DNA of 64,000 nucleotides from assembly GCF_963921235.1 (NCBI RefSeq), contig NC_086104.1:95480001-95544000 (forward strand), read 5' to 3'. Positions 9,255 to 63,049 of this stretch are shown piece by piece. Every line of letters begins with the position of its first letter. The first letter of the stretch is position 1. The notes beneath the pieces were generated by a model. The model had not been told where the DNA came from. It searched no databases and was given only the letters and a program-made list of their open reading frames with translations. This DNA is from Mobula hypostoma (lineage: Eukaryota). The position numbers were made by a program, and so were the translations under genes.

Positions 9255-10047
9255 TTCATATCCCTGCCAGTAGTACAAGTGCTACAACTGCCCCTTCACC
9301 TCCTCCCTCAGCACCGTTCAGGGCTCCAAACAGTCCTTCCAGGTGAGGTGACACTTCACCTGCAAGCCTTTTGGGGTCATATCCTGTGGCCAGCGCTCCT
9401 GATGCAGCCTTCTCTACATAGGTGCTACCCGACGTAGACTGCAGCACTGCTTTGTCGAGCCCCTCACGCCACCCATAACAGGCAGGATTTCCCTGGGTCC
9501 ACACATTCACATTCCCATTCCAACATGTCGGGCCATGGCTTAGGCCATTCTCAGGTTGGAGGAGCAACATCTCATATTCTGTCTAGGTAGCTTCTAGCTT
9601 GACGGCATGAACATTGATTTATCTAACTTCCAGTGATTTCTCTCACATCCTCCTTCTCTCTTTTTCCATTTGCCATGGCTCCCCTCTTACCCCTTCTCTT
9701 CTTACTTCTCACCTCCCTCTGGTGCCCCTCCCCCATTCCCATGGTCCACTCTCTTCTCCAATCAAATATCTCCTACTTCAGCCCTTTACCTTTTCCACCT
9801 ATCAGCTCCCAGCTTCTCACCCACCCACCATCCCCTCACCTGGCTTCACCTATCATTTGTCAGCTTGTAACCCTCCCACCTTCTTGTGTCTGGCTTATTC
9901 CCCCTTCCCTTCCGGTTTGGGTGATGAGTCTCAGCACAAAATGTCAACTGTTTAATTCCCCTCCATAGATGCTGCCTGACCTACTGAGTTCCTCCAGTAT
10001 CTTGTGTGTGTGGCCCTGGATTTCCAGCATCTGCAACATCTTGTGTC
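9255..10047 (+). mobile_element. Penelope-like element 3' part (degenerate GIY-YIG region + terminal repeat)
   Basis: cagggctccaaacagtccttccaggtgagg...ggggtcatatcctgtggccagcgctcctgatgcagccttctctacatagg resembles the V-I-Y-C-x-x-C-x-x-C-x-L-x-Y-I-G GIY-YIG stretch; CT-rich tract; terminal gatgctgcctgacctactgagttcctccag. Homologous to 18350-19680 and 37150-38310. Confidence 0.75.
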
Positions 10048-10660
10048 TTCATGTAAAGTATTTATTTTTACAAAGTGTCGTACTTTTTCTGGCTAGTAAA
10101 GCATTTTGAAAATCTCTGAAAGTTGAGAAATTTGCACAAAATATTGGAAGTTCACCATGTTTTTCCTTTATGTGCATGTTTTATTTTCCAACCTCCAAAT
10201 TTATAAGTGGATACAGTGCATACTTTGGAGCTAAATGTACCCAGAACCAAACATTAAAGAGCAAAGAAGATGATTGACAGGAAAGACTGCTGAGAAATGC
10301 TGAAAAGCCCCAAACATTGCTCAGACACTGAGCCTTAATGTAATTGTCCTTTGAAGCGGCTCAATTGATTGGGTCAAATTGTAAGTACCATCACCTTCCC
10401 AGACACGGGATAGAAGGACAAAGATTCCATCCATGACTGTAGGGCCCTAGAGTTAATCTCCTTTTCACAGGACCTGAAAATATGATCTGATCTCTGTGTA
10501 TCAGCAACAGCCTAAATATCCTCTCTGATTCATCTACCTGGCAGACAGGTCAAAGGGGATTGGTTGACACTGATAGGAAACACAGCAGGAACTATCTCCT
10601 TGGCACCAACCATCAAGTTAAAGCATTGAAGCTTCAGTGTAGGCTCTAATACCTTTGTTC

Positions 10661-49978: not shown

Positions 49979-51191
49979 TTTAAGATTTTGTGATCTATTT
50001 TTGGATAATTGTTTCATGTCTTTTTAACAATTATCTAATAAATATAATTTGCCCAGTTCCCACTTCTTTAGATATTTACAGATTAGAAATTTAAAAAATA
50101 CTGTTCTTCCTACCTTCCCGAATTTATATTCATCGGATATTTTGGAAAAAAATTTAAGTTTAGATCCTTTTCAGAAAGGTGTAATAGCAAACATTTATAA
50201 TATAATTATGAAAATACGTCCAGACGTAACTAATAAAGTCAAGAGTGATTGGGAAGGGGAACTTAAGATTACTTTACCTATTGAAAAATGGGAAAAAATT
50301 CAATTAGTTAATTCATCCTCTATATGTGCTAAACATGCGTTGATACAGTTTAAAGTAGTGCATATGGCTCGTATGTCTAAAGATAAATTATCTCATTATT
50401 ACTCTTATATAAATCCTATATGTGATAGATGTCACTCTGAGATATCTTCTTTAACTCATATGTTTTGGTCATGTCTTTTTTTAAAAAAATACTGGAAAAA
50501 TATCTTTGATATTACTGTACTTCAACTGTTTTGAGTATTGATTTACAACCCCACCCTATTACTGCAATTTTTGGTTTACCAATGATAGAACCAAATCTTT
50601 TAAGATCTTCAGCTCGTCGGATGACTTCATTTCTTACACTAATGGCCAGAAGATCCATTTTGCTGAATTGGAAAGAGATCAATCCCCCCACCCACATTTC
50701 ATTGGTTCTCAAACTGTGTTGTGTTTAAACTTAGAAAAAAATAGAAATGTTATTTATGATCCCTCTATTAAATTTGAAAAGACTTGGAGGTCATTTATTC
50801 AACACTTCCATATGATGTAATTTGACCTTCTCCAAACTTATTCTATTTCTTTTCAGTCTATGTTGAGGGGAGCGGAGTCAACGACACTAATGGTTCTTTT
50901 TTTTATGTTTCACAACAGCCCATGTCTTTTTTTTCTGTAGTTTAGTTGGTTAGTCTTGTTAGATTAGCTTTTTTGGGGGGGTATATATATTTTTTTTCTT
51001 TTTTCCTTTTTCATGTTAATTTGTTTATATATAATATTTGTATCCTGTAAGATTGGGAGGTTTAATATCCATGTACTAACTGGGTTTATATTTATATATG
51101 ATAATTACAATGTAATCCCAATAACTTTGTATGATTACTATGTTACGTTAATCTTTATCATTACGATACTAATAAAACGATTGAAAAAGAA
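49979..51191 (+). mobile_element. 5'-truncated L1-clade LINE with 13-bp TSD
   Basis: HFFRYLQIR...LIQFKVVH...PICDRCHSEISSLTHMFWSC (CCHC C-terminal domain); AATAAA 51171-51176; TSD AGACAAGAAAAAC at 49966-49978 and 51192-51204. Confidence 0.9.
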
Positions 51192-51344
51192 AGACAAGAA
51201 AAACAAGGAAGCATACATTAGGTTTAGATGGTCTAGGACAAGCAAACCCTTTGCTAAATATAAAAAGATCAAAAATGCACTGAAGGGCAAAATCAGGAGG
51301 GCAAACAGAGGGTATACGCTAGATCTGGCAGGTATTAAGGAAAT

Positions 51345-51649
51345 TGTGTTGGCGTGTGGCCAAGTGGTTAAGGCGTTCGTCTGGTGATTTGAAGGTCGCT
51401 AGTTTGAGCCTTGGCTGAGGCAGCGTGTTGTGTCCTTGAGCAAGGCACTTAACCACCCATTGCTCTGCGACGACACCGGTGCCAAGCTGTATCGGCCCTA
51501 GTGCCCTTCCCTTGGACAACATCGGTGGCGTGGAGAGGGGAGACTTGCAGCATGGGCAACTGCTGGTCTTCCATACAACCTTGCCCAGGCCTGCGCCCTG
51601 GAAAACTTCCAAGGTGCAAGTCCATAGTCTCACAAGACTAACAGATGCC
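51345..51649 (+). mobile_element. tRNA-derived SINE with CORE-like domain and 12-bp TSD
   Basis: A-box TGGCCAAGTGG, B-box-like GTTTGAGCC, gtgtccttgagcaaggcacttaacc (CORE-like); TSD TATTAAGGAAAT at 51333-51344 and 51650-51661. Confidence 0.85.
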
Positions 51650-52272: not shown

Positions 52273-53929
52273 GCTAGACAGGGTGGTGACAAAACCATTT
52301 AGCATGCTGGCCTTCATCAGGTAGGGAATTGAGACATTTGCTGGAGTTGTACAAGTCATTAGTGAGGTCCATTGTAGAGTTTTAGTCACCCTGTTAGAAG
52401 ACAGATGTGGTTAAACAGGAGAGTGCAGAATAAATTTACAACAATGTCGCCAGGACTAGAGGGACTGAGTTATATGGAGAGATTGGTCTTTATTCCTTGG
52501 GATGTAGGAGAGTTAGGAGCAACTCTAGAGAAATGTTTAAAATTATGAGCCATAAATAAGGCAGATGGCAACTGTCTTTTCCCTCAGAGTAGAGGAGTCC
52601 AAAACTAGGGTGTGTAGATTTAGGCTGAGTGGGGTAAGATTTAAAAAGGACTGAGGGGAAACTTTTTCCACACAGAGGGTGGTGAGTTTATGGTACATGC
52701 TGCCAGGGGAAGTGGTTGAGGCAGGAACAATAATATCATTTAAGAAGTACATTGATAGGGCAGGTCTTAGACAGATACGGGCTGAAGGTAAGAAATGGGG
52801 ACTAGCTGGGTTGGCATAGACTTGTCAGGCTGAAGGGCCTGTATGTACTGTATTGTTCTATGATTCCACAATCACCTACCTTGCTTCTAAACTCTAATGA
52901 AGGATAAACCCTCTCAACTTCTGCACTTCATCCCAGAAATCAATCTGGCAACTGGATCAACCTGAAATCTATCCTTCAGCACACTACGTTGTATCATGCC
53001 AATTAAGCTAATGATGTCTAATTAAACCTCTTCCCTCTCAAAGTAAATTATATCAAAATGTTTTTTGCTACCATATGCCATCTTGAGATTTATTTTCTTG
53101 CAGTCATTTACAGGAAAGTAAAGAAATACAAAGAATTTATGGAAAAAAACTATACACCAAGACTGACAAACAACCAATGTGCGAGATGAGCAAATAATAC
53201 TGAGAACATGAGTTGGAGAGGCCTTGAAAATGAGCTTGTACGTTAGTGGGTTCAGCTGAGAGTTGAGGTGAGTGAAGTTATCCACTCTGGCTCAGGAGTC
53301 TGATGGTTGAAGGGTGATAATTGTTCTTGAACCTGGTGGTGTGAGACTTAAGGCTCCTGTACCTCCTGCCTAATGGTAGCAATGAGAAGAGTTTGGCCTG
53401 GATGGTGGGGTCATTGATGATGGATGCTGCTTTCTTGTGACAGCACTTTGGGAGGGCTTTGTCTGTGATGGACTAGTCAGCATTTGGTCCATATTCTTCT
53501 ATTTTCTGCATATTCCTGTGCTTATCTATGGGCCTCAAACGCCACCACCACATTCACTACCACCCTGGCAGCACATTTCAGGCATCCAACACTGTGTTAA
53601 AAAAACTTGCCTTGCTCATCTTTTTTGAACATTACGTTGAATGCATGCTCTCTAGTGTTAGATATTTCAACTCTGGGGAAAAGGACACATGCTGTAAGAC
53701 TCTCTGATTGATCGTAAAGCATCCCACCATCAACCTATAGTGTGAGTTATCCAAATATTTCTGCTTCTCCTTTTTATCCTGCGTTTCTGTTAAGACATAG
53801 GCAACTAAATGATAATACTGCATCTCTATGCACCATCTCTGTGCACGTTGCATTCCGGTTCACTATTAGTAATAAACCCCTGGTTCTGAAGAAAATTCAC
53901 CCACAGGCAGCAGTAGCTGTGGCACTGGA

Positions 53930-54460
53930 GCGATGATTCCGCTTCGCTTGGGTCTGCCTGTGAGTGATGTTCTCCGCGCTCGGTTGTTCGTGACTGGGAT
54001 CGCATTCTCGGCATTCGGCTGCCCGGGCCTCGGTTGCTATGGTGACGGGCCGGGTTTTCCAGGCCGCAGTATGTCTACGGCGTCCAAGGTGGCCCTCGGC
54101 GTTTCCGTGGTGCTGACAGCGGGGACGGTGGCCGGGGTTCACCTCAAGCAAAAGCTGGAGAGGGAGGTGATTGTGAGGCGCCGGGGAGGGCGGGGTCGGA
54201 GTGCTGCCTCGAGGTGGAGCTGCGGGCCTTGCGCCCGACCGTGCCCAGTGCGGGCTAGGCCCCGGGGAAGGAGCCGGGTGGGGTGGGGACGGGACTGGTG
54301 CTCGCGGGTGGGGGAGAGTGTACCCCGGCACGTGCGGCCCAGGAGCGCGCCGCCCCTCCCCCCATCGGCGCAAGAATCGGTCAAAGGTCACCTAGGAAGA
54401 TCCGCCAAGGCCTCCAGGCTCAGGAGTTTGTCTCACCAGCGCACCCGTGCTCAGTGTCTG
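53930..54460 (+). promoter_or_regulatory. CpG island, shared PET117/KAT14 promoter and first exon
   Basis: Sharp GC/CpG-rich block; X-box-like GTTGCTATGGTGAC at 54033-54046; GC box gggcgggg at ~54188. Confidence 0.75.
54071..54166 (+). CDS. PET117: PET117 cytochrome c oxidase assembly factor, exon 1
   Basis: MSTASKVALGVSVVLTAGTVAGVHLKQKLERE, donor GTGATT from 54167, phase 0; resembles human MSRSSKVVLGLSVLLTAATVAGVHVKQ. Confidence 0.93.
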
Positions 54461-54654
54461 CCTGACAGGTTGCTGCAAAGCCCATCTCACGGCATTGCAA
54501 TCCCCTCCCCATTGGTTGTGTGGAATGCTAAAGAAGGGGTGTCATTTGTCTCCTCTGCTTGCATAGGTTCACGTTGCAGTTCGCATGCGTTTCCCCTGGG
54601 TGCTCCTGTAGCAAATGTAATGGAATACCGTTGGAAGTGGTATCTAGCATGAAG

Positions 54655-54945
54655 GAGATGAAAGATTTGCTTCATTTGTTACATGCACAGTGAAATGCGC
54701 CATTTTCAGTCAGTGATCATCAGAATCCGATGACTGTGCTGGGGGCAGCCCACCAGTGTCACCACGCTTCCAGTGTCAATATAGCATGCCCTTTGCTAAC
54801 CTTAACATATGAGTCTTTGGAACACGTGAGGAAACCAGAGCACCCGGGGGAAACCCACATGGGGAGTGTACAAACTGCAGCGGGGAATTGAATCCCAAGT
54901 TTACAGCTATCTTCTGATGGTGTTACATTAACCACTACCCTACCT
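54655..54945 (-). mobile_element. V-SINE-related element
   Basis: gaggaaaccagagcacccgggggaaacccac...gggaattgaatccc; similar to 31270-31550. Confidence 0.65.
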
Positions 54946-56279
54946 GTGTATTTGATTTGGAAAATCAACATCTTGCTGTAGAATCTGTCTGCATTCATAA
55001 TTTGCCTTTTGTTTTGGGGGTCGTGTGTTAGGATTTGTAATGTAGTTGTGTAAACCCTTCTTGGGGATACACTTTCCTTACATTTGTTAGTTGATCTGGA
55101 GTGGGATTTTCAGTAAAACGTCAGGGAAGGTGCATCTGGATATTTACACCAGGCTGCGTTCACACTGCAGAGGAACCTGGGGTTATTGTGAAGGGTAGGG
55201 AAAGGGGAACCCAGATGACTACTGTTAACTACCCCTTGGTGTAGATTAATAAGATGCATCAAAAGATGGGCTCGAATGAGAAAATAAGATGCAGAGGGAA
55301 ATAAGGGGAGAGGGCTTGGATCTCATGGCATTGTGCGCCAGAGGTTTGCATGGACCCGATGGGCTGAATGGCTGCCATCTATTATGATTATAATATAAGT
55401 AATGCACAGAGTAAAGAAATCAATCAATATGATATACTTCCCTTCTATTGATCGTCATGGATAACCCTCGAGGTCGAGGATGATGGTCTTCGTTCTGTTG
55501 ATCTACTTATGGGCTCTCAAGTGGCTTATGAGTCCAATCTTGGCTTTGAAAGTTCTATGGATAAGGACTTTCAGAAAGATGGAGCAGGAGTCTGACCAGA
55601 GATGGGAAGAGGAGGGGAAGCATGCCGCAGTGGGTCACAGAGCATCTGTAAATACAGTGCCAGCACGAGGTACATCTTGAACCAGCCTGGTTGGATGCTG
55701 GAGAGGTCACAGGGAAAATGTACAAACCAATTGCAGAACTGGAACCCTGATGAGAGATTGCCGGTGGGGTAAAGTGATGGCACTAATTGCTATGCTACCA
55801 CACTGCCTATTAGAGCATGAGAGGGAACAGTTTGCTCCAGGCATCCTTGGATGTGTGGAAGGTTTGGGTACTGCTCCTGCAGCCATCTTTATTGGAATGA
55901 TAATGTACCTTCTTCAGACGTTTGATGTTTCATTTTACACAGGAGTCTAAGTACTATCACTGCTTTTTCCAGCTTTCCAATTAGAAATAGAAGCAGGATC
56001 AAGGTATAAGGTCCCTTGTTTCTGCTTCAAAATTCAAAAACATCCTGACTTATCCTCTACCTTATCCATTTTCTAATCTGATATCCTGTCTCCCTTCATT
56101 TTCTGAACACCTCTTCTCTTGGTTTTGTATATTAACGACAGCAAAACCTTGGACAGAGCATGCACGCACGGTCGTAGGAGGTTAAACTGAATGAGCACAT
56201 CTCTGGACTCTGAACCTCAAGCCTTCAGTTGTTTGAGAATTTAGGATGTCCTTGCCTCAAGCTTTCGTTTTTTAGGAAA

Positions 56280-56880
56280 TTAATGCAACTTTTACTTTAT
56301 TGTCGCCGAACAATTGATACTAGAGCGTACAATCATCACAGTGATATTTGATTCTGCGCTTCCCGCTCCCTGGATTGCAAATCGATAGTAAATGTTAAAA
56401 ATTAAAATTATAAATCATAAATAGAAAATAGAAAAGCGAAAGTAAGGTAGTGCAAAAAAAAAACGAGATGCAGGTCTGTATATTTGGAGGGTACGGCCCA
56501 GATCCGGGTCAGGATCTGTTCGGCAGTCTTATCACAGTTGGAAAGAAACTGTTCCCAAATCTGGCCGTACTAGTCTTCAAGCTCCTGAGCCTTCTCCCCG
56601 AGGGAAGAGGGACAAAAAGTGTGTTGGCTGGGTGGGTTATGTCCTTGATTATCCTGGCAGCTCCGACAGCGTGCGGTGTAAAGTGAGTCCAAGGACGGAG
56701 GATTGGTTTGTGTGATGTGCTGGGTTGTGTTCACAATCTTCTGCAGTTTCTTCCGGTCTTGGACAGGACAACTTCTGTACCAGGTTGTGATGCACCCTAG
56801 AAGAATGCTTTCTACGGTGCATCTATAAAAACTAGTGAGGGTTTTAGGGGACAGGCCAAATTTCTTTAGCTTTCTCAGGA
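56280..56880 (-). mobile_element. Rex/Babar-type LINE 3' fragment in the PET117 intron
   Basis: Reverse strand encodes ...IIKDITHPANTLFVPLPSGRRLRSLKTSTARFGNSFFPTVIRL. Confidence 0.8.
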
Positions 56881-56953
56881 AACTTTAGATATTAATAGTT
56901 TTGCTGACTTTTAAATGCCGCCATTAGGCTAAATCCCTTTTTATTTTCTGCAG

Positions 56954-57118
56954 AGATTGCGAGAAGGGGTTTACAGGGATCTTGAACGACAGCAACGCAA
57001 GAAAGAAAACATTCGGATACTAGAAGAACAGATTAGTCTGACAAAGAAGCTGGAAGCTGATCGACTCAAGCAAAGTCCCTTGGCTTCTGGAAGTTCCCAA
57101 CAAACCAGAATGAAATAG
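56954..57118 (+). CDS. PET117: PET117 exon 2 (protein total 86 aa)
   Basis: Acceptor ccctttttattttctgcag (AG 56952-56953); RLREGVYRDLERQQRKKENIRILEEQISLTKKLEADRLKQSPLASGSSQQTRMK, TAG 57116-57118. Confidence 0.93.
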   Translation, partial: RLREGVYRDLERQQRKKENIRILEEQISLTKKLEADRLKQSPLASGSSQQTRMK

Positions 57119-57271
57119 CCTGTTTTATTCTCTAATGTGAATTGTCTTAATTGATGATGGATATTTTCCTTTATGGTGGGAAAAACACAGAATTAATTAA
57201 TAACAAAACTGCTTCTTAGCTATTAGATGAATCTACCCTTTTAAGCTTTTCTGTGCCAGAAGTTTTTTGCG

Positions 57272-57536
57272 ATGGAAGACAATGGGGAGGCAAAAAGTTT
57301 AACTGCTCGCCAAATGGATGAATGCACAAGAATGGCTGCATCGGAAGGTTTGGAAGAAGGAGAGGTCGAAGGGGAAACCTTACTGATAGTTGAGTCTGAA
57401 GACCAGGCATCGGTGGATCTGTCCCACGATCAGAGTGGGGATTCCTTGAACAGTGAACTTGGTGATGAAGGTGATGTGTCCTGGGCAGAAGAAATGTCTT
57501 ATTATTGTGACAAATGCCAGAAATGGATCCCCACAA
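57272..57536 (+). CDS. KAT14: KAT14 (CSRP2BP/ATAC2) first coding segment
   Basis: gcgATGg Kozak; SEGLEEGEVEGETLLIVESEDQASVDLSHDQSGDSLNS...YYCDKCQKWIP nearly identical to human KAT14; donor GTACGT from 57537, phase 1. Confidence 0.95.
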
Positions 57537-58289
57537 GTACGTATGATATTTCTGAGCACCTGTAATCTGCTTTGTTATGACTTCCATTGTAATCTCAAAG
57601 TTTACCTGGAAATTGGACAGGTCTCTGAAAGTCAGTGCTGAAGCTCCTTAGAGTTAACTGGATAATGTGAAGAGAATTGGAATTTCCTAGCGTTTTGGGT
57701 GTTAACACTTGAGGTTTTCTGCAGTTTTGGAAATGTAGAGAGATTACTGCTTATAACCAGAACTTTCTCCCTCAATACTTCCTGTTCTGGTGAACAAATA
57801 ATACTGTGATTAACAAAAGATAATTTGGAGGGAAATGTCATTTTGAAAAGCCTGATTGAACTTCCAGAGTGATGGAAGCCAACCAGAGCTATTTGCACTC
57901 TCTGGTCAGTACATCTTCAATGGCAAAATGCTGAAATTAACAGGGTTCACAATCCGATTTCAACACAACAGTGTACCTCGCATTGGCAGCCCTGATGGGT
58001 CACTGGAGCAGCCCTGTTGCCATTGGTTGCTGACCTTATCGGGGTTACAGATGGTGTGGGATTTAGCTTAAGCCAAATCCACAAAGGTTGAATATTTCCT
58101 GCAGAAATTCTGCTTTTCCTAAGTGAGGGAAAGGTAGTGTGGTCATTTGTTTTTGCCCCAATCCTTCAGCTATAGAATGTTTCAGTGAGGTGACCTGCTT
58201 CCACCAGGCACCCTACTGTTAAGTTTGTGGGGTTCGTTTAATAGGAGTATTGGATGTAGTTGAAGGTTTTTGAATGGAACAGACTACTA

Positions 58290-58550
58290 AAGTAGCAGTT
58301 AGCGCGGCACAGGGCATCGGAGTTCAGTCCCGGTGTCCTCTGTAAGGAAGCTGTGCACGTCTCCCCATGGAATGTGTGGGTTTCCTCCGGGTGCTCTGGT
58401 TTTCTCCCACAGTCTAAAGACGTTCCGGGTGGGTTAATTGGTCATTGTAAAGTGTCCCGTGATTAGGCTAGGGTTAGATTGGTGTTATCAGGGTTTGCTA
58501 GGCAGCATGGCTTGACGGGCCTTTTCTGCATGGTACCTCTAAATAAATAA
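58290..58550 (+). mobile_element. V-SINE (HE1-like)
   Basis: gtgggtttcctccgggtgctctggttttctcccacagtctaaagacg V-domain, AATAAATAAATAAA tail. Confidence 0.75.
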
Positions 58551-59931: not shown

Positions 59932-60594
59932 TATGTGATCTACCTGTGGTCGTAGAAGTACAAATGAGGAAAAAAAAATTATTTTATGGTTATACTTTGA
60001 TCCTGGGATGTAAATAAAGACAGTGCCTTGCGTTGGAGCAGATATGGAGTGTGCTATTGAAGCATTTAAAAATATTATATTAATTTGTTTAGATAGATAT
60101 AGAGGAAATATTTCCCTCAATCAAAATCCAGAACAAGGGATGCCACCTTAAAATTGTGGCTAAGCTTTCAGGAGTGACTGAGAATGTAATTTTTCCACAT
60201 AAAGGGTGGGAGAAATGTGGAATTCTATCCTACAAGAGAAATAAGTTGAGATCATATCAAGGAATGTGACACGAAGAAATGTGAATAGCGGTGTGGTAAA
60301 TGGTACAGAACTGCCATACTCTGGGAGAGAAAGCCAGGATAGACTTGAAGTAGGCTTGCATGGTTTGTTTTGCTTAAGAGAAAGAAGATATAATGCTTGT
60401 TTTTATTTTGAACTGCTCTAAATGATACCTGATCACTTGTCTGACACACGGCACACTAACTGCTTGTGAAGTTCACCAATTGGGAAGATGCACAATACAT
60501 GTCTTATCCTTTTCGTAACGTTTAGACTTTGAATACTTTTTTACTGTTTCTTTTCCCCAGTTTGACAACGATTACATTCTTTCTTGGTTTTCAG

Positions 60595-60716
60595 CTCAGT
60601 TGAGGGGAGAGCACCCCAGTTACTTGCGAGGTGATAACTTCTTCCGGTTTAGTTGTTCAGACTGCACAGAGGATCGGAAGGAGCATTTTGAAAGACTGAA
60701 GCTCACATGGCAACAA
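60595..60716 (+). CDS. KAT14: KAT14 coding exon 2 (122 nt)
   Basis: AG 60593-60594, GTGAGT from 60717; (T)QLRGEHPSYLRGDNFFRFSCSDCTEDRKEHFERLKLTWQQ. Confidence 0.95.
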
Positions 60717-60859
60717 GTGAGTGTGTATCTAGAGCACTGTTTGGATTGATTTTATCTTCTGAATCAATTCTGCCATCTTGCACTTCAGGATCAATATCCC
60801 TACTTGTTTCTTTCTCCTTATCTCCAGTGTTCTATATTATGTTCAAAAAGGGAGATACT

Positions 60860-61480: not shown

Positions 61481-62569
61481 CTTTGAATCTAAAGAATGGT
61501 GTCACAGCATACTGATAGCATTCCCTTGGAAGCTGAAGCAATGAAATTGTTTCTACCCTGATGAACCTATCTCCTCAGACTACCTCTGCTAACACTGAGA
61601 GGATAAGCGAAAAACACAGTCTGCTGTGAGAAAGCAAATATTACTTCAAGGAAGACGAGGTAGAAATTAATTTGGAGAATCAGCTCTGTTGTCTGAGAGG
61701 GCAACAAACTAATTGCAAAGCAATGGAATACTTGCCAAACTGGCAGTTCCCAATGAGATTTATTGTGTTGTTCGGAGATGTGCTCTAACTCCTCAGACAT
61801 TAGAATTTCTTTATAGCCTATTATGTCCTGCAGTTGGGCATGGACTCACAGTAAGTGGGCAACCCATGTCCTCATACAATAGAAAATGCCCCAGATTTAT
61901 TTTATATAAGATATCTGCTATAAGTGTCAAATTTCATTTTCAGGAGCTAGATTTACACCTGGGACTTGTAACTGAAAGGTTAGAACTAAAGAATTGAGTC
62001 GTCGATGTTACTCTAGGGTGTAAAGTATTGCAGCTTTCTGCTTCTTGGCCACATTTTCTGTATCCAAGGAATATTGCCAGCATCAATACTGTTGCTACTT
62101 TTGCTTCTCTTGGCAAGCCTGCTACGTTCAGTCTCAGTGAGCACTACCGAATTTCCTTTTGCTTTATTTTTATCTCTGTCACTAACTTCCCATCTTTCTC
62201 ATGTAAACAATACTGTGGCAAACTCCAATAAGAAGTTCATATTAGCCACTAACTTTTAGTCTCCCAGTGGTCCTGCTTCATTGTCCTTAATGTTTTATAG
62301 TAGCTTTCCAATAAAATTAAAAACTAATTTTAAAAAAGTGCAGCAAAAATAACAGAGGCAAATGGTGCTGACTTTTTATTTTGCATATTAAATACTGTTA
62401 TGTAATTTATAATTAACAGCTGTATTGCTCTTTGAGAGCTTGTGCGGACTTGTTGAGCTAAATGGCTTTCCTCTGTGTTCTGCTTTTCTGTGTTGGGAGA
62501 CATTCTGAGATGAGAGGTATGATACAATTCCCATTCCTGAATTGAGCCTTTGCTTCCTCTTTGTATTAG

Positions 62570-62691
62570 GTTGTGGTATTGGCCATGTACAATTTATCAT
62601 TGGAAGGGACTGGTCGCCAAGGCTACTTCCGTTGGAAGGAGGATATTTGTGCTTTTATCGACAAGCACTGGGCATTCTTATTAGGGAACAG
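62570..62691 (+). CDS. KAT14: KAT14 coding exon 3 (122 nt); gene continues beyond the window
   Basis: AG 62568-62569, GT 62692-62693; VVVLAMYNLSLEGTGRQGYFRWKEDICAFIDKHWAFLLGN(R). Confidence 0.95.
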
Positions 62692-63049
62692 GTAAACTGT
62701 CCTTCCACAATCCACAGAAGACTTGCCTGAAAAATTGTAACATTTTGTGGTGGGAGAATTGTGTTGTGCTGGAATACCATGGTGTTTCAGATTTTCCTGA
62801 TGTAACCATTGGTTCAAGGCAATACAGTATCTGCTTACTGTGCATTTCTAGCACAGTGATACATTGGCAGAGTCGTGGAGAAATGGAAGCAAATCTTAAA
62901 GCAGATATTTGTATGTCTATAACTTGTAATTTAGGCTCTTGCCCAGTATTGATTATTGCTAAGTTATTTGCTGTTTGATGAATGTAGCTCATTTGCCCTC
63001 TTGTAAGCCAGGCTGAACTTGCAATTACTTACAAACAGGAAGGTGGAAA

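What the first reader, a model, noticed from the sequence alone, without database searches (positions are those of the whole stretch)
54071..57536. PET117 and KAT14 appear to share one promoter and one exon (bicistronic layout)
Seen: the PET117 stop (57118) lies only 153 nt before the KAT14 ATG (57272). The spacer is AT-rich, with no CpG island and no AATAAA or ATTAAA, and the only promoter-like CpG island nearby is at 53930-54460. The simplest model is one exon 56954-57536 carrying the end of PET117 and the start of KAT14. Known (recalled, not checked): human PET117 and KAT14 annotations overlap similarly. Inference: a single mRNA coupling a mitochondrial complex IV assembly factor to a nuclear ATAC acetyltransferase subunit may be conserved across jawed vertebrates. 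The PET117 stop is about 420 nt upstream of an exon junction, so such an mRNA must escape or exploit NMD.
Basis: partly seen in the sequence, partly recalled or inferred. Interest (0 to 1): 0.7.

Follow-up and report, generated by a model that had tools for sequence, protein, structure and literature searches.

The report
Shared PET117–KAT14 bicistronic gene
In this devil-ray genome the small mitochondrial assembly factor PET117 and the nuclear acetyltransferase subunit KAT14 share a promoter region and an exon; RNA assemblies from a skate, a duck, a mammal and a teleost carry both reading frames on one spliced contig, so this is a real, ancient and apparently undiscussed two-protein vertebrate mRNA.

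Summary
In the window (Mobula hypostoma) PET117 is encoded at 54071-54166 and 56954-57118. The KAT14 start codon is at 57272. The 153-nt spacer between them is AT-rich, has one CpG and has no AATAAA, ATTAAA or common variant. The only CpG island nearby is 53851-54500.

The bicistronic reading is supported by RNA from other species; no Mobula RNA was available.
- Skate: all 17 RNA-seq contigs examined place PET117 exon 2 and a 158-nt spacer directly before the KAT14 ATG. Many start with a template-switch oligo just upstream of the PET117 ATG.
- Duck: 7 of 7 contigs with the full 782-aa KAT14 ORF do the same, and they map to the duck genome as one shared exon.
- A mammal and a teleost contig also join the two ORFs. 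The teleost spacer is only 6 nt.
- A skate cDNA maps onto the window with 56952-57531 as one block.

PET117 in a starfish and a coral has no KAT14 within 10 kb.

The spacer evolves about neutrally and shows no special structure, so the layout is conserved rather than the sequence. How KAT14 is translated (probably reinitiation or leaky scanning) and whether the mRNA is NMD-sensitive remain untested. No open-access paper found discusses this pair.

Verdict: a new member of a known kind (RPP14/HTD2-like).

The parts
53851..54500 (.). CpG island, the only promoter-like region for both genes
   Evidence: GC 0.64, CpG observed/expected 0.78, 52 CpG. The next qualifying patches are small: 51301-51550, and two inside the KAT14 intron downstream of its ATG.
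53972..54061 (+). Inferred dispersed transcription start zone
   Evidence: Skate contigs begin with the SMART template-switch oligo 10-136 nt before the PET117 ATG. The longest leader (L007) aligns to the window from 53972. This is inferred by homology; no Mobula RNA was available.
54039..54116 (+). Upstream AUG in strong context (gctATGG) opening a 25-codon out-of-frame uORF that overlaps the PET117 AUG
   Evidence: A positionally equivalent gccATGG is present in 4 of 17 skate contigs, those with long leaders. Its role is inferred only.
54071..54166 (+). PET117 exon 1 coding part (32 codons, transmembrane helix); donor GAG|gtgatt
   Evidence: P0001 is 100% identical and is named PET117 homolog, Pfam PF15786.
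54088..54090 (+). Alternative donor AAG|gt after codon 6, retained in Mobula
   Evidence: It is used in skate contigs L009 and L017 and gives an in-frame loss of 26 codons. L009 aligns to the window up to 54088. The sequence is shown.
54167..56953 (+). PET117 intron (2787 nt), no CpG island
   Evidence: GC 0.44, CpG observed/expected 0.42. It is spliced out in the colinear skate cDNA.
56954..57536 (+). Shared exon: end of PET117, spacer, start of KAT14
   Evidence: It forms a single alignment block with the skate cDNA. The acceptor has 15/17 pyrimidines. The same single exon is seen in the duck genome against duck cDNA.
56954..57118 (+). PET117 exon 2 coding part with stop TAG 57116-57118
   Evidence: It is 86% identical in nucleotides to skate, 72% at third positions, with no indels.
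57119..57271 (+). Intercistronic spacer, 153 nt, with five AUGs that open 1-21 codon ORFs, all ending before the KAT14 AUG
   Evidence: Identity to skate is 71% with 33 gap columns, which is about neutral. No Rfam match and fold z -0.66.
57227..57244 (+). Last spacer uORF (ATGAATCTACC..., 5 codons), whose start is conserved in skate
57237..57262 (+). Candidate internal acceptor ...ctgtgccag|AAG (exon would start at 57260), in frame with PET117 exon 1 and with KAT14
   Evidence: 12/17 pyrimidines. 57272-57260 = 12 nt, so it is in frame. The AG and a 14-nt pyrimidine-rich insert are absent in skate. No contig in any species uses such a site.
57272..57536 (+). KAT14 first coding segment (88 codons plus 1 nt), AUG context gcgATGG
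   Evidence: Protein-level conservation with skate starts at this ATG. NCBI's 782-aa CDS starts here.
60595..60716 (+). KAT14 next coding exon
62570..62691 (+). KAT14 following coding exon

Best explanation
PET117 and KAT14 form one transcription unit in Mobula hypostoma.

**Transcript (shown in relatives, inferred for Mobula).** Transcription starts at dispersed sites in the CpG island 53851-54500. Exon 1 (to 54166) is spliced to a single exon, 56954-57536. That exon holds the last 54 codons of PET117, a 153-nt spacer and the first 88 codons of KAT14, and it is spliced on to the remaining KAT14 exons. The main KAT14 mRNA is therefore bicistronic, with PET117 as the 5' cistron. The window shows no separate KAT14 promoter and no poly(A) signal in the spacer. 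The layout dates back at least to the common ancestor of jawed vertebrates. The layout is conserved; the spacer sequence is not.

**Translation (inferred).**
- PET117 is made by ordinary cap-dependent initiation. Its AUG has a purine at -3 but T at +4.
- KAT14 has an optimal AUG context (purine at -3, G at +4) in all five species examined. It is reached by ribosomes that either skip the PET117 AUG or reinitiate after PET117 and the short spacer uORFs.
- Skipping could arise from very short leaders, or from the overlapping upstream uORF at 54039 in long leaders.
- All spacer uORFs end before the KAT14 AUG.

**NMD (inferred).** Termination at the PET117 stop, 418 nt before an exon junction, should make the mRNA a candidate NMD substrate.
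For: **Window.** Exon, stop, ATG, spacer and CpG island are as described. NCBI CDS calls agree.

**Colinearity.** Skate cDNA L001 aligns as 54061-54166 / 56952-57531 / 60592-60718 / 62568-62692.

**Skate RNA.**
- 17 contigs come from 17 runs in four accession series. All have PET117 exon 2 and the spacer directly upstream of the KAT14 ATG.
- 10 of 10 contigs with the complete KAT14 ORF do, and none has another 5' exon.
- 11 contigs start with a template-switch oligo upstream of the PET117 ATG.

**Duck.** 7 of 7 contigs with the 782-aa KAT14 ORF carry PET117 exon 2 and a 272-nt spacer. They map to the duck genome as exon 1 plus one shared exon, 9577-10061 and beyond.

**Other lineages.** Mammal contig L033 joins both ORFs with a 263-nt spacer. 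Teleost contig L045 joins both ORFs with a 6-nt spacer. An Alosa gene model fuses the two genes.

**Context and uORF pattern.**

**Purifying selection.** Both ORFs are under it, while the spacer is near-neutral.
Against: - No RNA from Mobula was available; P0001 is found on the genome only.
- Logan contigs are short-read assemblies. They could merge a PET117 mRNA with a long 3' end and a KAT14 mRNA that starts inside exon 2 or the spacer.
- Three contigs (L010, L014, L044) begin exactly at the exon 1/exon 2 junction. Other upstream exons are therefore possible, and two such variants exist (L009/L017, L043).
- Skate, duck and the mammal have AATAAA, AGTAAA or ATTAAA in the spacer. Part of the transcripts may end there as monocistronic PET117 mRNA.
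- Five AUGs in the spacer and an 86-codon upstream ORF should make KAT14 translation inefficient under the scanning model.
- No conserved or unusually stable structure supports an IRES.
Confidence: 0.8

Rival explanations
1. There are two overlapping but separate transcripts. PET117 mRNA runs through the spacer into or past the KAT14 ATG exon. KAT14 mRNA starts at its own, CpG-poor start site within the PET117 intron, exon 2 or spacer. The joint contigs are then assembly merges of the two.
For: De Bruijn-graph contigs cannot phase distant features. Contigs L010, L014 and L044 start at the first base of exon 2 without a template-switch oligo.
Against: No contig in skate (17) or duck (7) starts inside the spacer or carries a KAT14-specific leader. 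All template-switch-tagged 5' ends lie upstream of the PET117 ATG. The Mobula intron and spacer have no CpG island. In teleost L045 only 6 nt separate the ORFs, which leaves no room for a start site between them.
Confidence: 0.08
2. The promoter and exon 1 are shared, but alternative splicing separates the products. KAT14 mRNAs join exon 1 (or its alternative donor) to an internal acceptor in the spacer, such as 57259|57260. This skips the PET117 exon 2 coding part and may give a PET117(1-32)-KFFA-KAT14 fusion.
For: The site ctgtgccag|AAG is in frame and has a fair pyrimidine tract. A teleost genome has a strong acceptor 5 nt before the KAT14 ATG. Alternative splicing of the upstream part does occur.
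Against: The AG and the 14-nt insert that creates the tract are absent in skate. None of 24 skate and duck contigs uses an acceptor in the spacer. A transmembrane mitochondrial anchor fused to a nuclear ATAC subunit is functionally implausible (inference).
Confidence: 0.05
3. The bicistronic RNA is real but mainly serves PET117, or is a non-productive NMD substrate. KAT14 protein comes from a minor isoform not captured in assemblies.
For: An 80-86-codon upstream ORF plus 3-5 spacer AUGs should strongly reduce downstream initiation. The PET117 stop lies 418 nt before an exon junction.
Against: Every contig holding a complete KAT14 ORF in two distant species is bicistronic. The layout has persisted since the split of cartilaginous and bony vertebrates. 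In teleosts it survives a 4.6-kb insertion or intron in the spacer, which argues that the joint mRNA is the functional KAT14 mRNA.
Confidence: 0.07

Closest known systems
RPP14/HTD2 bicistronic mRNA (human; reviewed in PMC4705651, MitoCarta3.0 PMC7778944, rat long-read data PMC6825209)
   Same: One mature mRNA carries two non-overlapping ORFs for unrelated proteins, one nuclear (an RNase P subunit) and one mitochondrial. Translation of the second ORF is presumed to occur by leaky scanning or reinitiation.
   Different: There the mitochondrial protein is the downstream cistron, lying in the 3' UTR after the last junction. Here the mitochondrial protein is the upstream cistron. The downstream ORF is long (782 aa) and spread over many exons, so the first stop codon lies upstream of exon junctions.
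SNURF/SNRPN and GDF1/CERS1 bicistronic genes (PMC4705651)
   Same: Classical vertebrate bicistronic transcripts with a short upstream ORF and a larger downstream ORF.
   Different: Their reported conservation is narrower (my own knowledge, not checked here). No mitochondrial-nuclear pairing is involved.
uORF-encoded functional small proteins such as MIEF1 microprotein, ASDURF and MKKS uORF products (MKKS is listed in PMC4705651; the others are from my own knowledge)
   Same: A small, conserved protein is encoded in the 5' leader of a larger gene's mRNA. Several of these are mitochondrial.
   Different: PET117 is an old, independently annotated gene with a yeast orthologue (PMC3334569), not a newly found microprotein. 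In a starfish and a coral it stands alone, so the linkage is secondary.
Conjoined or read-through genes (transcription-induced chimeras)
   Same: The transcripts cover two annotated genes.
   Different: Conjoined genes each keep their own promoter and terminal exon, and the read-through is a minor splice variant. Here the downstream gene shows no 5' exon of its own in any contig, and the two ORFs share an exon.
Polycistronic nuclear genes of green algae (PMC7896298, PMC11291117; abstracts seen)
   Same: The loci are exclusively polycistronic, with leaky scanning proposed as the mechanism.
   Different: They come from a different kingdom. The algal inter-ORF regions and upstream ORFs are reported as AUG-poor. 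Here the spacer holds 2-5 AUGs.

Membership tests
Vertebrate bicistronic mRNA gene (RPP14/HTD2 type) | Two conserved, non-overlapping ORFs for unrelated proteins on one mature, spliced mRNA | tested here: met
   Spliced contigs carry both ORFs in skate, duck, a mammal and a teleost. For Mobula this is inferred from colinearity.
Vertebrate bicistronic mRNA gene (RPP14/HTD2 type) | A single promoter or start region; the downstream ORF has no start site of its own | tested here: inconclusive
   Template-switch-tagged 5' ends occur only upstream of PET117 in skate, and Mobula has only one CpG island. However, there is no CAGE data and no Mobula RNA.
Vertebrate bicistronic mRNA gene (RPP14/HTD2 type) | Both proteins are actually translated from the joint mRNA | not testable with these tools
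   This needs Ribo-seq, reporters or proteomics.
Vertebrate bicistronic mRNA gene (RPP14/HTD2 type) | Evolutionary conservation of the linkage | tested here: met
   It is present in batoids, a bird, a mammal and teleosts. It is absent in a starfish and a coral.
PET117 family (Pfam PF15786) | Sequence membership; N-terminal transmembrane helix plus charged coiled C-terminal part | tested here: met
   P0001 is identical to the window product, with precomputed PF15786 and the NCBI name PET117 homolog. There are 255 homologues at E<=0.001.
KAT14 / ATAC2 (GNAT acetyltransferase subunit of ATAC) | A ~780-aa protein with a conserved N-terminal acidic/zinc-finger-like region and a C-terminal GNAT domain | tested here: met
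   The 782-aa product of this locus has PF00583/PF13508/PF13673. The N-terminal exons align with skate, duck and teleost KAT14. The GNAT part lies outside the window.
EJC-dependent NMD target | A termination codon more than 50-55 nt upstream of an exon-exon junction | tested here: met
   The PET117 stop at 57118 is 418 nt before the 57536 junction.
EJC-dependent NMD target | The transcript is stabilised when NMD is inhibited | not testable with these tools
   No expression data were available.
Cellular IRES-driven second cistron | A conserved or stable RNA structure in the intercistronic region | tested here: not met
   Spacer identity is about neutral with many indels. Length varies from 6 to 272 nt. 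Fold z is -0.66 and there is no Rfam match.
Conjoined / read-through gene | The downstream gene has its own first exon and promoter, and the chimera joins the upstream penultimate exon to downstream exon 2 | tested here: not met
   No KAT14-specific first exon appears in 24 contigs. The two ORFs share an exon.

The most novel reading that the evidence does not exclude
PET117-KAT14 is an obligate, operon-like vertebrate gene more than 400 million years old, in which the essential ATAC acetyltransferase subunit has no mRNA of its own. Its synthesis would then be set by how ribosomes handle the upstream mitochondrial COX-assembly cistron, through start-site choice, the overlapping upstream uORF, reinitiation and NMD. 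That would give a direct translational link between respiratory-chain biogenesis and nuclear histone acetylation.
Probability: 0.25. Interest if true: 0.8.

Novelty: new member of a known kind. Interest (0 to 1): 0.6.

Why it matters
Conserved bicistronic mRNAs are rare in vertebrates. Here the downstream cistron is a large protein spread over many exons (782 aa).

- **Gene annotation.** Two 'genes' are one transcription unit.
- **Interpreting PET117 or KAT14 variants and knock-outs.** A change in PET117 exon 2, its stop codon or the spacer may alter KAT14 output, and the reverse may also hold.
- **Translation mechanisms.** It offers a natural model of efficient initiation after an ~80-codon ORF and several uAUGs, on an mRNA that should attract NMD.
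- **Mito-nuclear coordination.**

The teleost form (6-nt spacer in the mRNA, an intron apparently inserted in the spacer) suggests selection to keep the two ORFs on one RNA.

Tried and rejected
- **Literature.** Ten full-text searches were run: PET117 with CSRP2BP, KAT14, bicistronic, polycistronic, uORF and ASDURF; KAT14 with uORF; and others. Only gene lists co-mention the two genes, and no paper describes a shared transcript. One search was a badly designed query and gave nothing useful. My recollection that Szklarczyk et al. 2012 placed PET117 in the CSRP2BP 5' UTR was not borne out by the text.
- **IRES-like element.** No Rfam hit, no unusual folding and no sequence constraint in the spacer, so this was rejected.
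- **AUG depletion of the PET117 CDS as a sign of leaky scanning.** The absence of out-of-frame AUGs follows from the amino-acid sequence itself: synonymous randomisation gives P(0) = 0.37-1.0. It is therefore not evidence.
- **Deeper origin.** In a starfish and a coral, PET117 has no KAT14 within 10 kb, either by annotation or by tblastn. No lamprey, hagfish, amphioxus or tunicate PET117 could be identified among named cluster members, so the origin between early deuterostomes and jawed vertebrates is open.
- **Mobula RNA.** There is none in the collection.
- **Alternative poly(A) hexamers in the Mobula spacer.** None was found.
Full report
**What is in the window.** The window comes from Mobula hypostoma. 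The 86-aa product of 54071-54166 plus 56954-57118 is identical to the NCBI protein 'PET117 homolog, mitochondrial [Mobula hypostoma]' (Pfam PF15786).
- Exon 1 has 32 codons and ends GAG|gtgatt.
- The acceptor ttttctgcag|AGATTG opens an exon at 56954.
- The PET117 frame stops at TAG 57116-57118.
- The KAT14 ATG is at 57272, and its frame runs open to CAA|gtacgt after 57536.
- NCBI's CDS calls on the same assembly have the same spacing: a 782-aa acetyltransferase starts 153 nt after the PET117 stop.
- The spacer has GC 0.31 and one CpG. There is no + strand AATAAA or ATTAAA from 56406 to 58542, and none of 14 variant hexamers lies inside the spacer.
- The only CpG island between 51.6 and 58.2 kb is 53851-54500.
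- The downstream exons are 60595-60716 and 62570-62691.

**Is it one mRNA?** No Mobula RNA exists in the searchable collections, so I used relatives. A PET117 protein that is 95% identical to that of the skate Rhinoraja is encoded on Logan RNA-seq contigs. A look-up with the KAT14 protein of one of those contigs returned more.
- All 17 contigs, from 17 runs in four accession series, have the spliced PET117 exon 2, a 158-nt spacer and the KAT14 ATG in one piece.
- All 10 contigs with a complete KAT14 ORF do so, and none has any other leader.
- Eleven contigs begin with the SMART template-switch oligo followed by 10-136 nt of leader and the PET117 ATG. This marks capped 5' ends upstream of PET117.
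- The skate cDNA aligns to the Mobula window in colinear blocks: 54061-54166, 56952-57531 (one uninterrupted block across the spacer), 60592-60718 and 62568-62692.

**Other lineages.**
- Duck (Anas): seven of seven RNA contigs with the complete 782-aa KAT14 ORF carry PET117 exon 2 and a 272-nt spacer. They map to duck genomic DNA as exon 1 plus one exon that contains the PET117 end, the spacer and the KAT14 start.
- Other birds: genomic contigs show the same exon with 245-272-nt spacers.
- A mammal: one RNA contig joins PET117, a 263-nt spacer and the KAT14 N-terminus.
- A teleost: one RNA contig has the two ORFs separated by only TAA ACC AGG ATG.
- Another teleost (Trematomus): the genome has 4.6 kb of repeat-rich DNA between the PET117 stop and the KAT14 ATG. 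A donor-like CAG|GTGACT follows the stop, and a strong acceptor lies 5 nt before the ATG. I infer that teleosts acquired an intron in the spacer while keeping the joint mRNA.
- An Alosa gene model fuses both genes.
- In a starfish and a coral, PET117 has no KAT14 within 10 kb by annotation or tblastn.

The linkage is therefore at least as old as jawed vertebrates, and it is not found in these two invertebrates.

**What is conserved.** Both ORFs are under purifying selection. Between Mobula and skate they are 85-86% identical, 65-72% at third positions, with no indels. The spacer is 71% identical with 33 gap columns, which is about neutral. In birds the spacer (70%) resembles the introns (57-66%). 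Spacer length ranges from 6 to 272 nt. The Mobula spacer has no Rfam match and folds no better than shuffles (z -0.66). So the arrangement is conserved, not an RNA element.

Recurrent features:
- The KAT14 AUG always has a purine at -3 and G at +4.
- The PET117 AUG always has a purine at -3 and T at +4.
- Every AUG in the spacer (2-5 per species) opens a 1-21-codon ORF that stops before the KAT14 AUG.

The lack of out-of-frame AUGs inside PET117 is explained by its amino-acid sequence and carries no weight.

**Mechanism (inferred).** PET117 is translated as the cap-proximal ORF. KAT14 must be reached by leaky scanning and/or reinitiation, which is the mechanism assumed for RPP14/HTD2, SNURF/SNRPN and GDF1/CERS1 (PMC4705651). 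Two observations suggest how ribosomes might get past PET117.
- Many skate leaders are only about 10-30 nt long.
- Long leaders in both skate and Mobula contain an upstream AUG in strong context (Mobula 54039, gctATGG). Its out-of-frame ORF overlaps the PET117 AUG and ends inside exon 1.

Alternative splicing also reshapes the upstream cistron. Skates use a donor after codon 6, which removes the transmembrane helix in frame (L009, L017), and Mobula keeps that GT at 54089. Ducks have a cassette exon that places a stop right after exon 1 (L043).

The PET117 stop is 418 nt before an exon junction, so by the 50-55-nt rule the mRNA is a candidate NMD target. This was not testable here.

Skate, duck and the mammal have AATAAA, AGTAAA and ATTAAA respectively in their spacers. 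A short monocistronic PET117 mRNA may therefore coexist with the joint mRNA in those species. Mobula and the teleost mRNA have no such signal.

**Rivals.**
- Short-read contigs could merge overlapping transcripts, so an internal KAT14 start site cannot be excluded. There is no positive sign of one: no contig starts in the spacer, no CpG island lies there, and the teleost spacer is 6 nt.
The frame is right and the tract is fair. However, the AG and the 14-nt insert are missing in skate, and no contig anywhere uses such a site.

**Novelty.** Six open-access papers mention PET117 together with KAT14 or CSRP2BP, and the two I opened do so only in gene lists. Searches pairing PET117 with bicistronic or polycistronic returned mitochondrial reviews and screens, none with PET117 in its title or abstract; I did not open these. 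Searches with uORF or ASDURF, and KAT14 with uORF, returned nothing. I therefore rate this a new, well-supported member of the known, small class of conserved vertebrate bicistronic genes.

Noticed in passing
L009:1-100 and L017:1-110 (skate RNA contigs); window 54088-54090: An alternative donor after PET117 codon 6 (..TCCAAG|GT) is joined to exon 2. It removes 26 codons (the transmembrane helix) in frame, on contigs that also carry full KAT14. Mobula retains the GT.
   Followed up: partly
L043:29-209, which maps to duck genome L036:8393-8573: A cassette exon lies between PET117 exons 1 and 2 in a duck KAT14-bearing contig. It places TAA immediately after exon 1, which shortens the upstream ORF to 32 codons.
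   Followed up: partly
window 54039-54116; L007:95-289: An upstream AUG in strong Kozak context lies in the long 5' leader and is conserved in position between Mobula and skate. It opens an out-of-frame uORF that overlaps the PET117 AUG. It is present in 4 of 17 skate contigs, those with long leaders.
   Followed up: partly
L035:11771-16361 (Trematomus bernacchii) versus L045:296-307 (teleost RNA): A teleost genome has 4.6 kb of repeats between the PET117 stop and the KAT14 ATG, whereas a teleost mRNA has 6 nt. This implies a new intron inside the former spacer. The species of L045 is unknown.
   Followed up: partly
L009:4342-6750 (-), L036:30454-35942 (-), L034:1-4581 (-): A DZANK1-like gene (Fn3_assoc, DZR and ankyrin domains) lies tail-to-tail after KAT14 in skate and duck; in skate the two share an RNA contig. 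In the starfish it lies head-to-head next to PET117, although KAT14 is absent there. This looks like old neighbourhood conservation.
   Followed up: no
P0009 (Scyliorhinus canicula), P0028 (Alosa alosa), P0022 (Rhineura floridana isoform X1): Public gene models are irregular at this locus. The catshark PET117 has a different N-terminal exon without the transmembrane helix. The shad model fuses PET117 to KAT14. The worm-lizard isoform has an insertion between the exons.
   Followed up: no
window 50049-50534 (+): A 161-aa ORF upstream of the promoter, with cysteine/histidine-rich motifs, looks to me like the C-terminal end of a retrotransposon ORF2. This is my impression from the translation and was not searched.
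   Followed up: no
window 57109-57114: AATGAA, a rare poly(A) hexamer variant, overlaps the last PET117 codons and is followed by a U/GU-rich stretch. It is the only conceivable signal for a short PET117 mRNA in Mobula, and it is not conserved in skate.
   Followed up: partly
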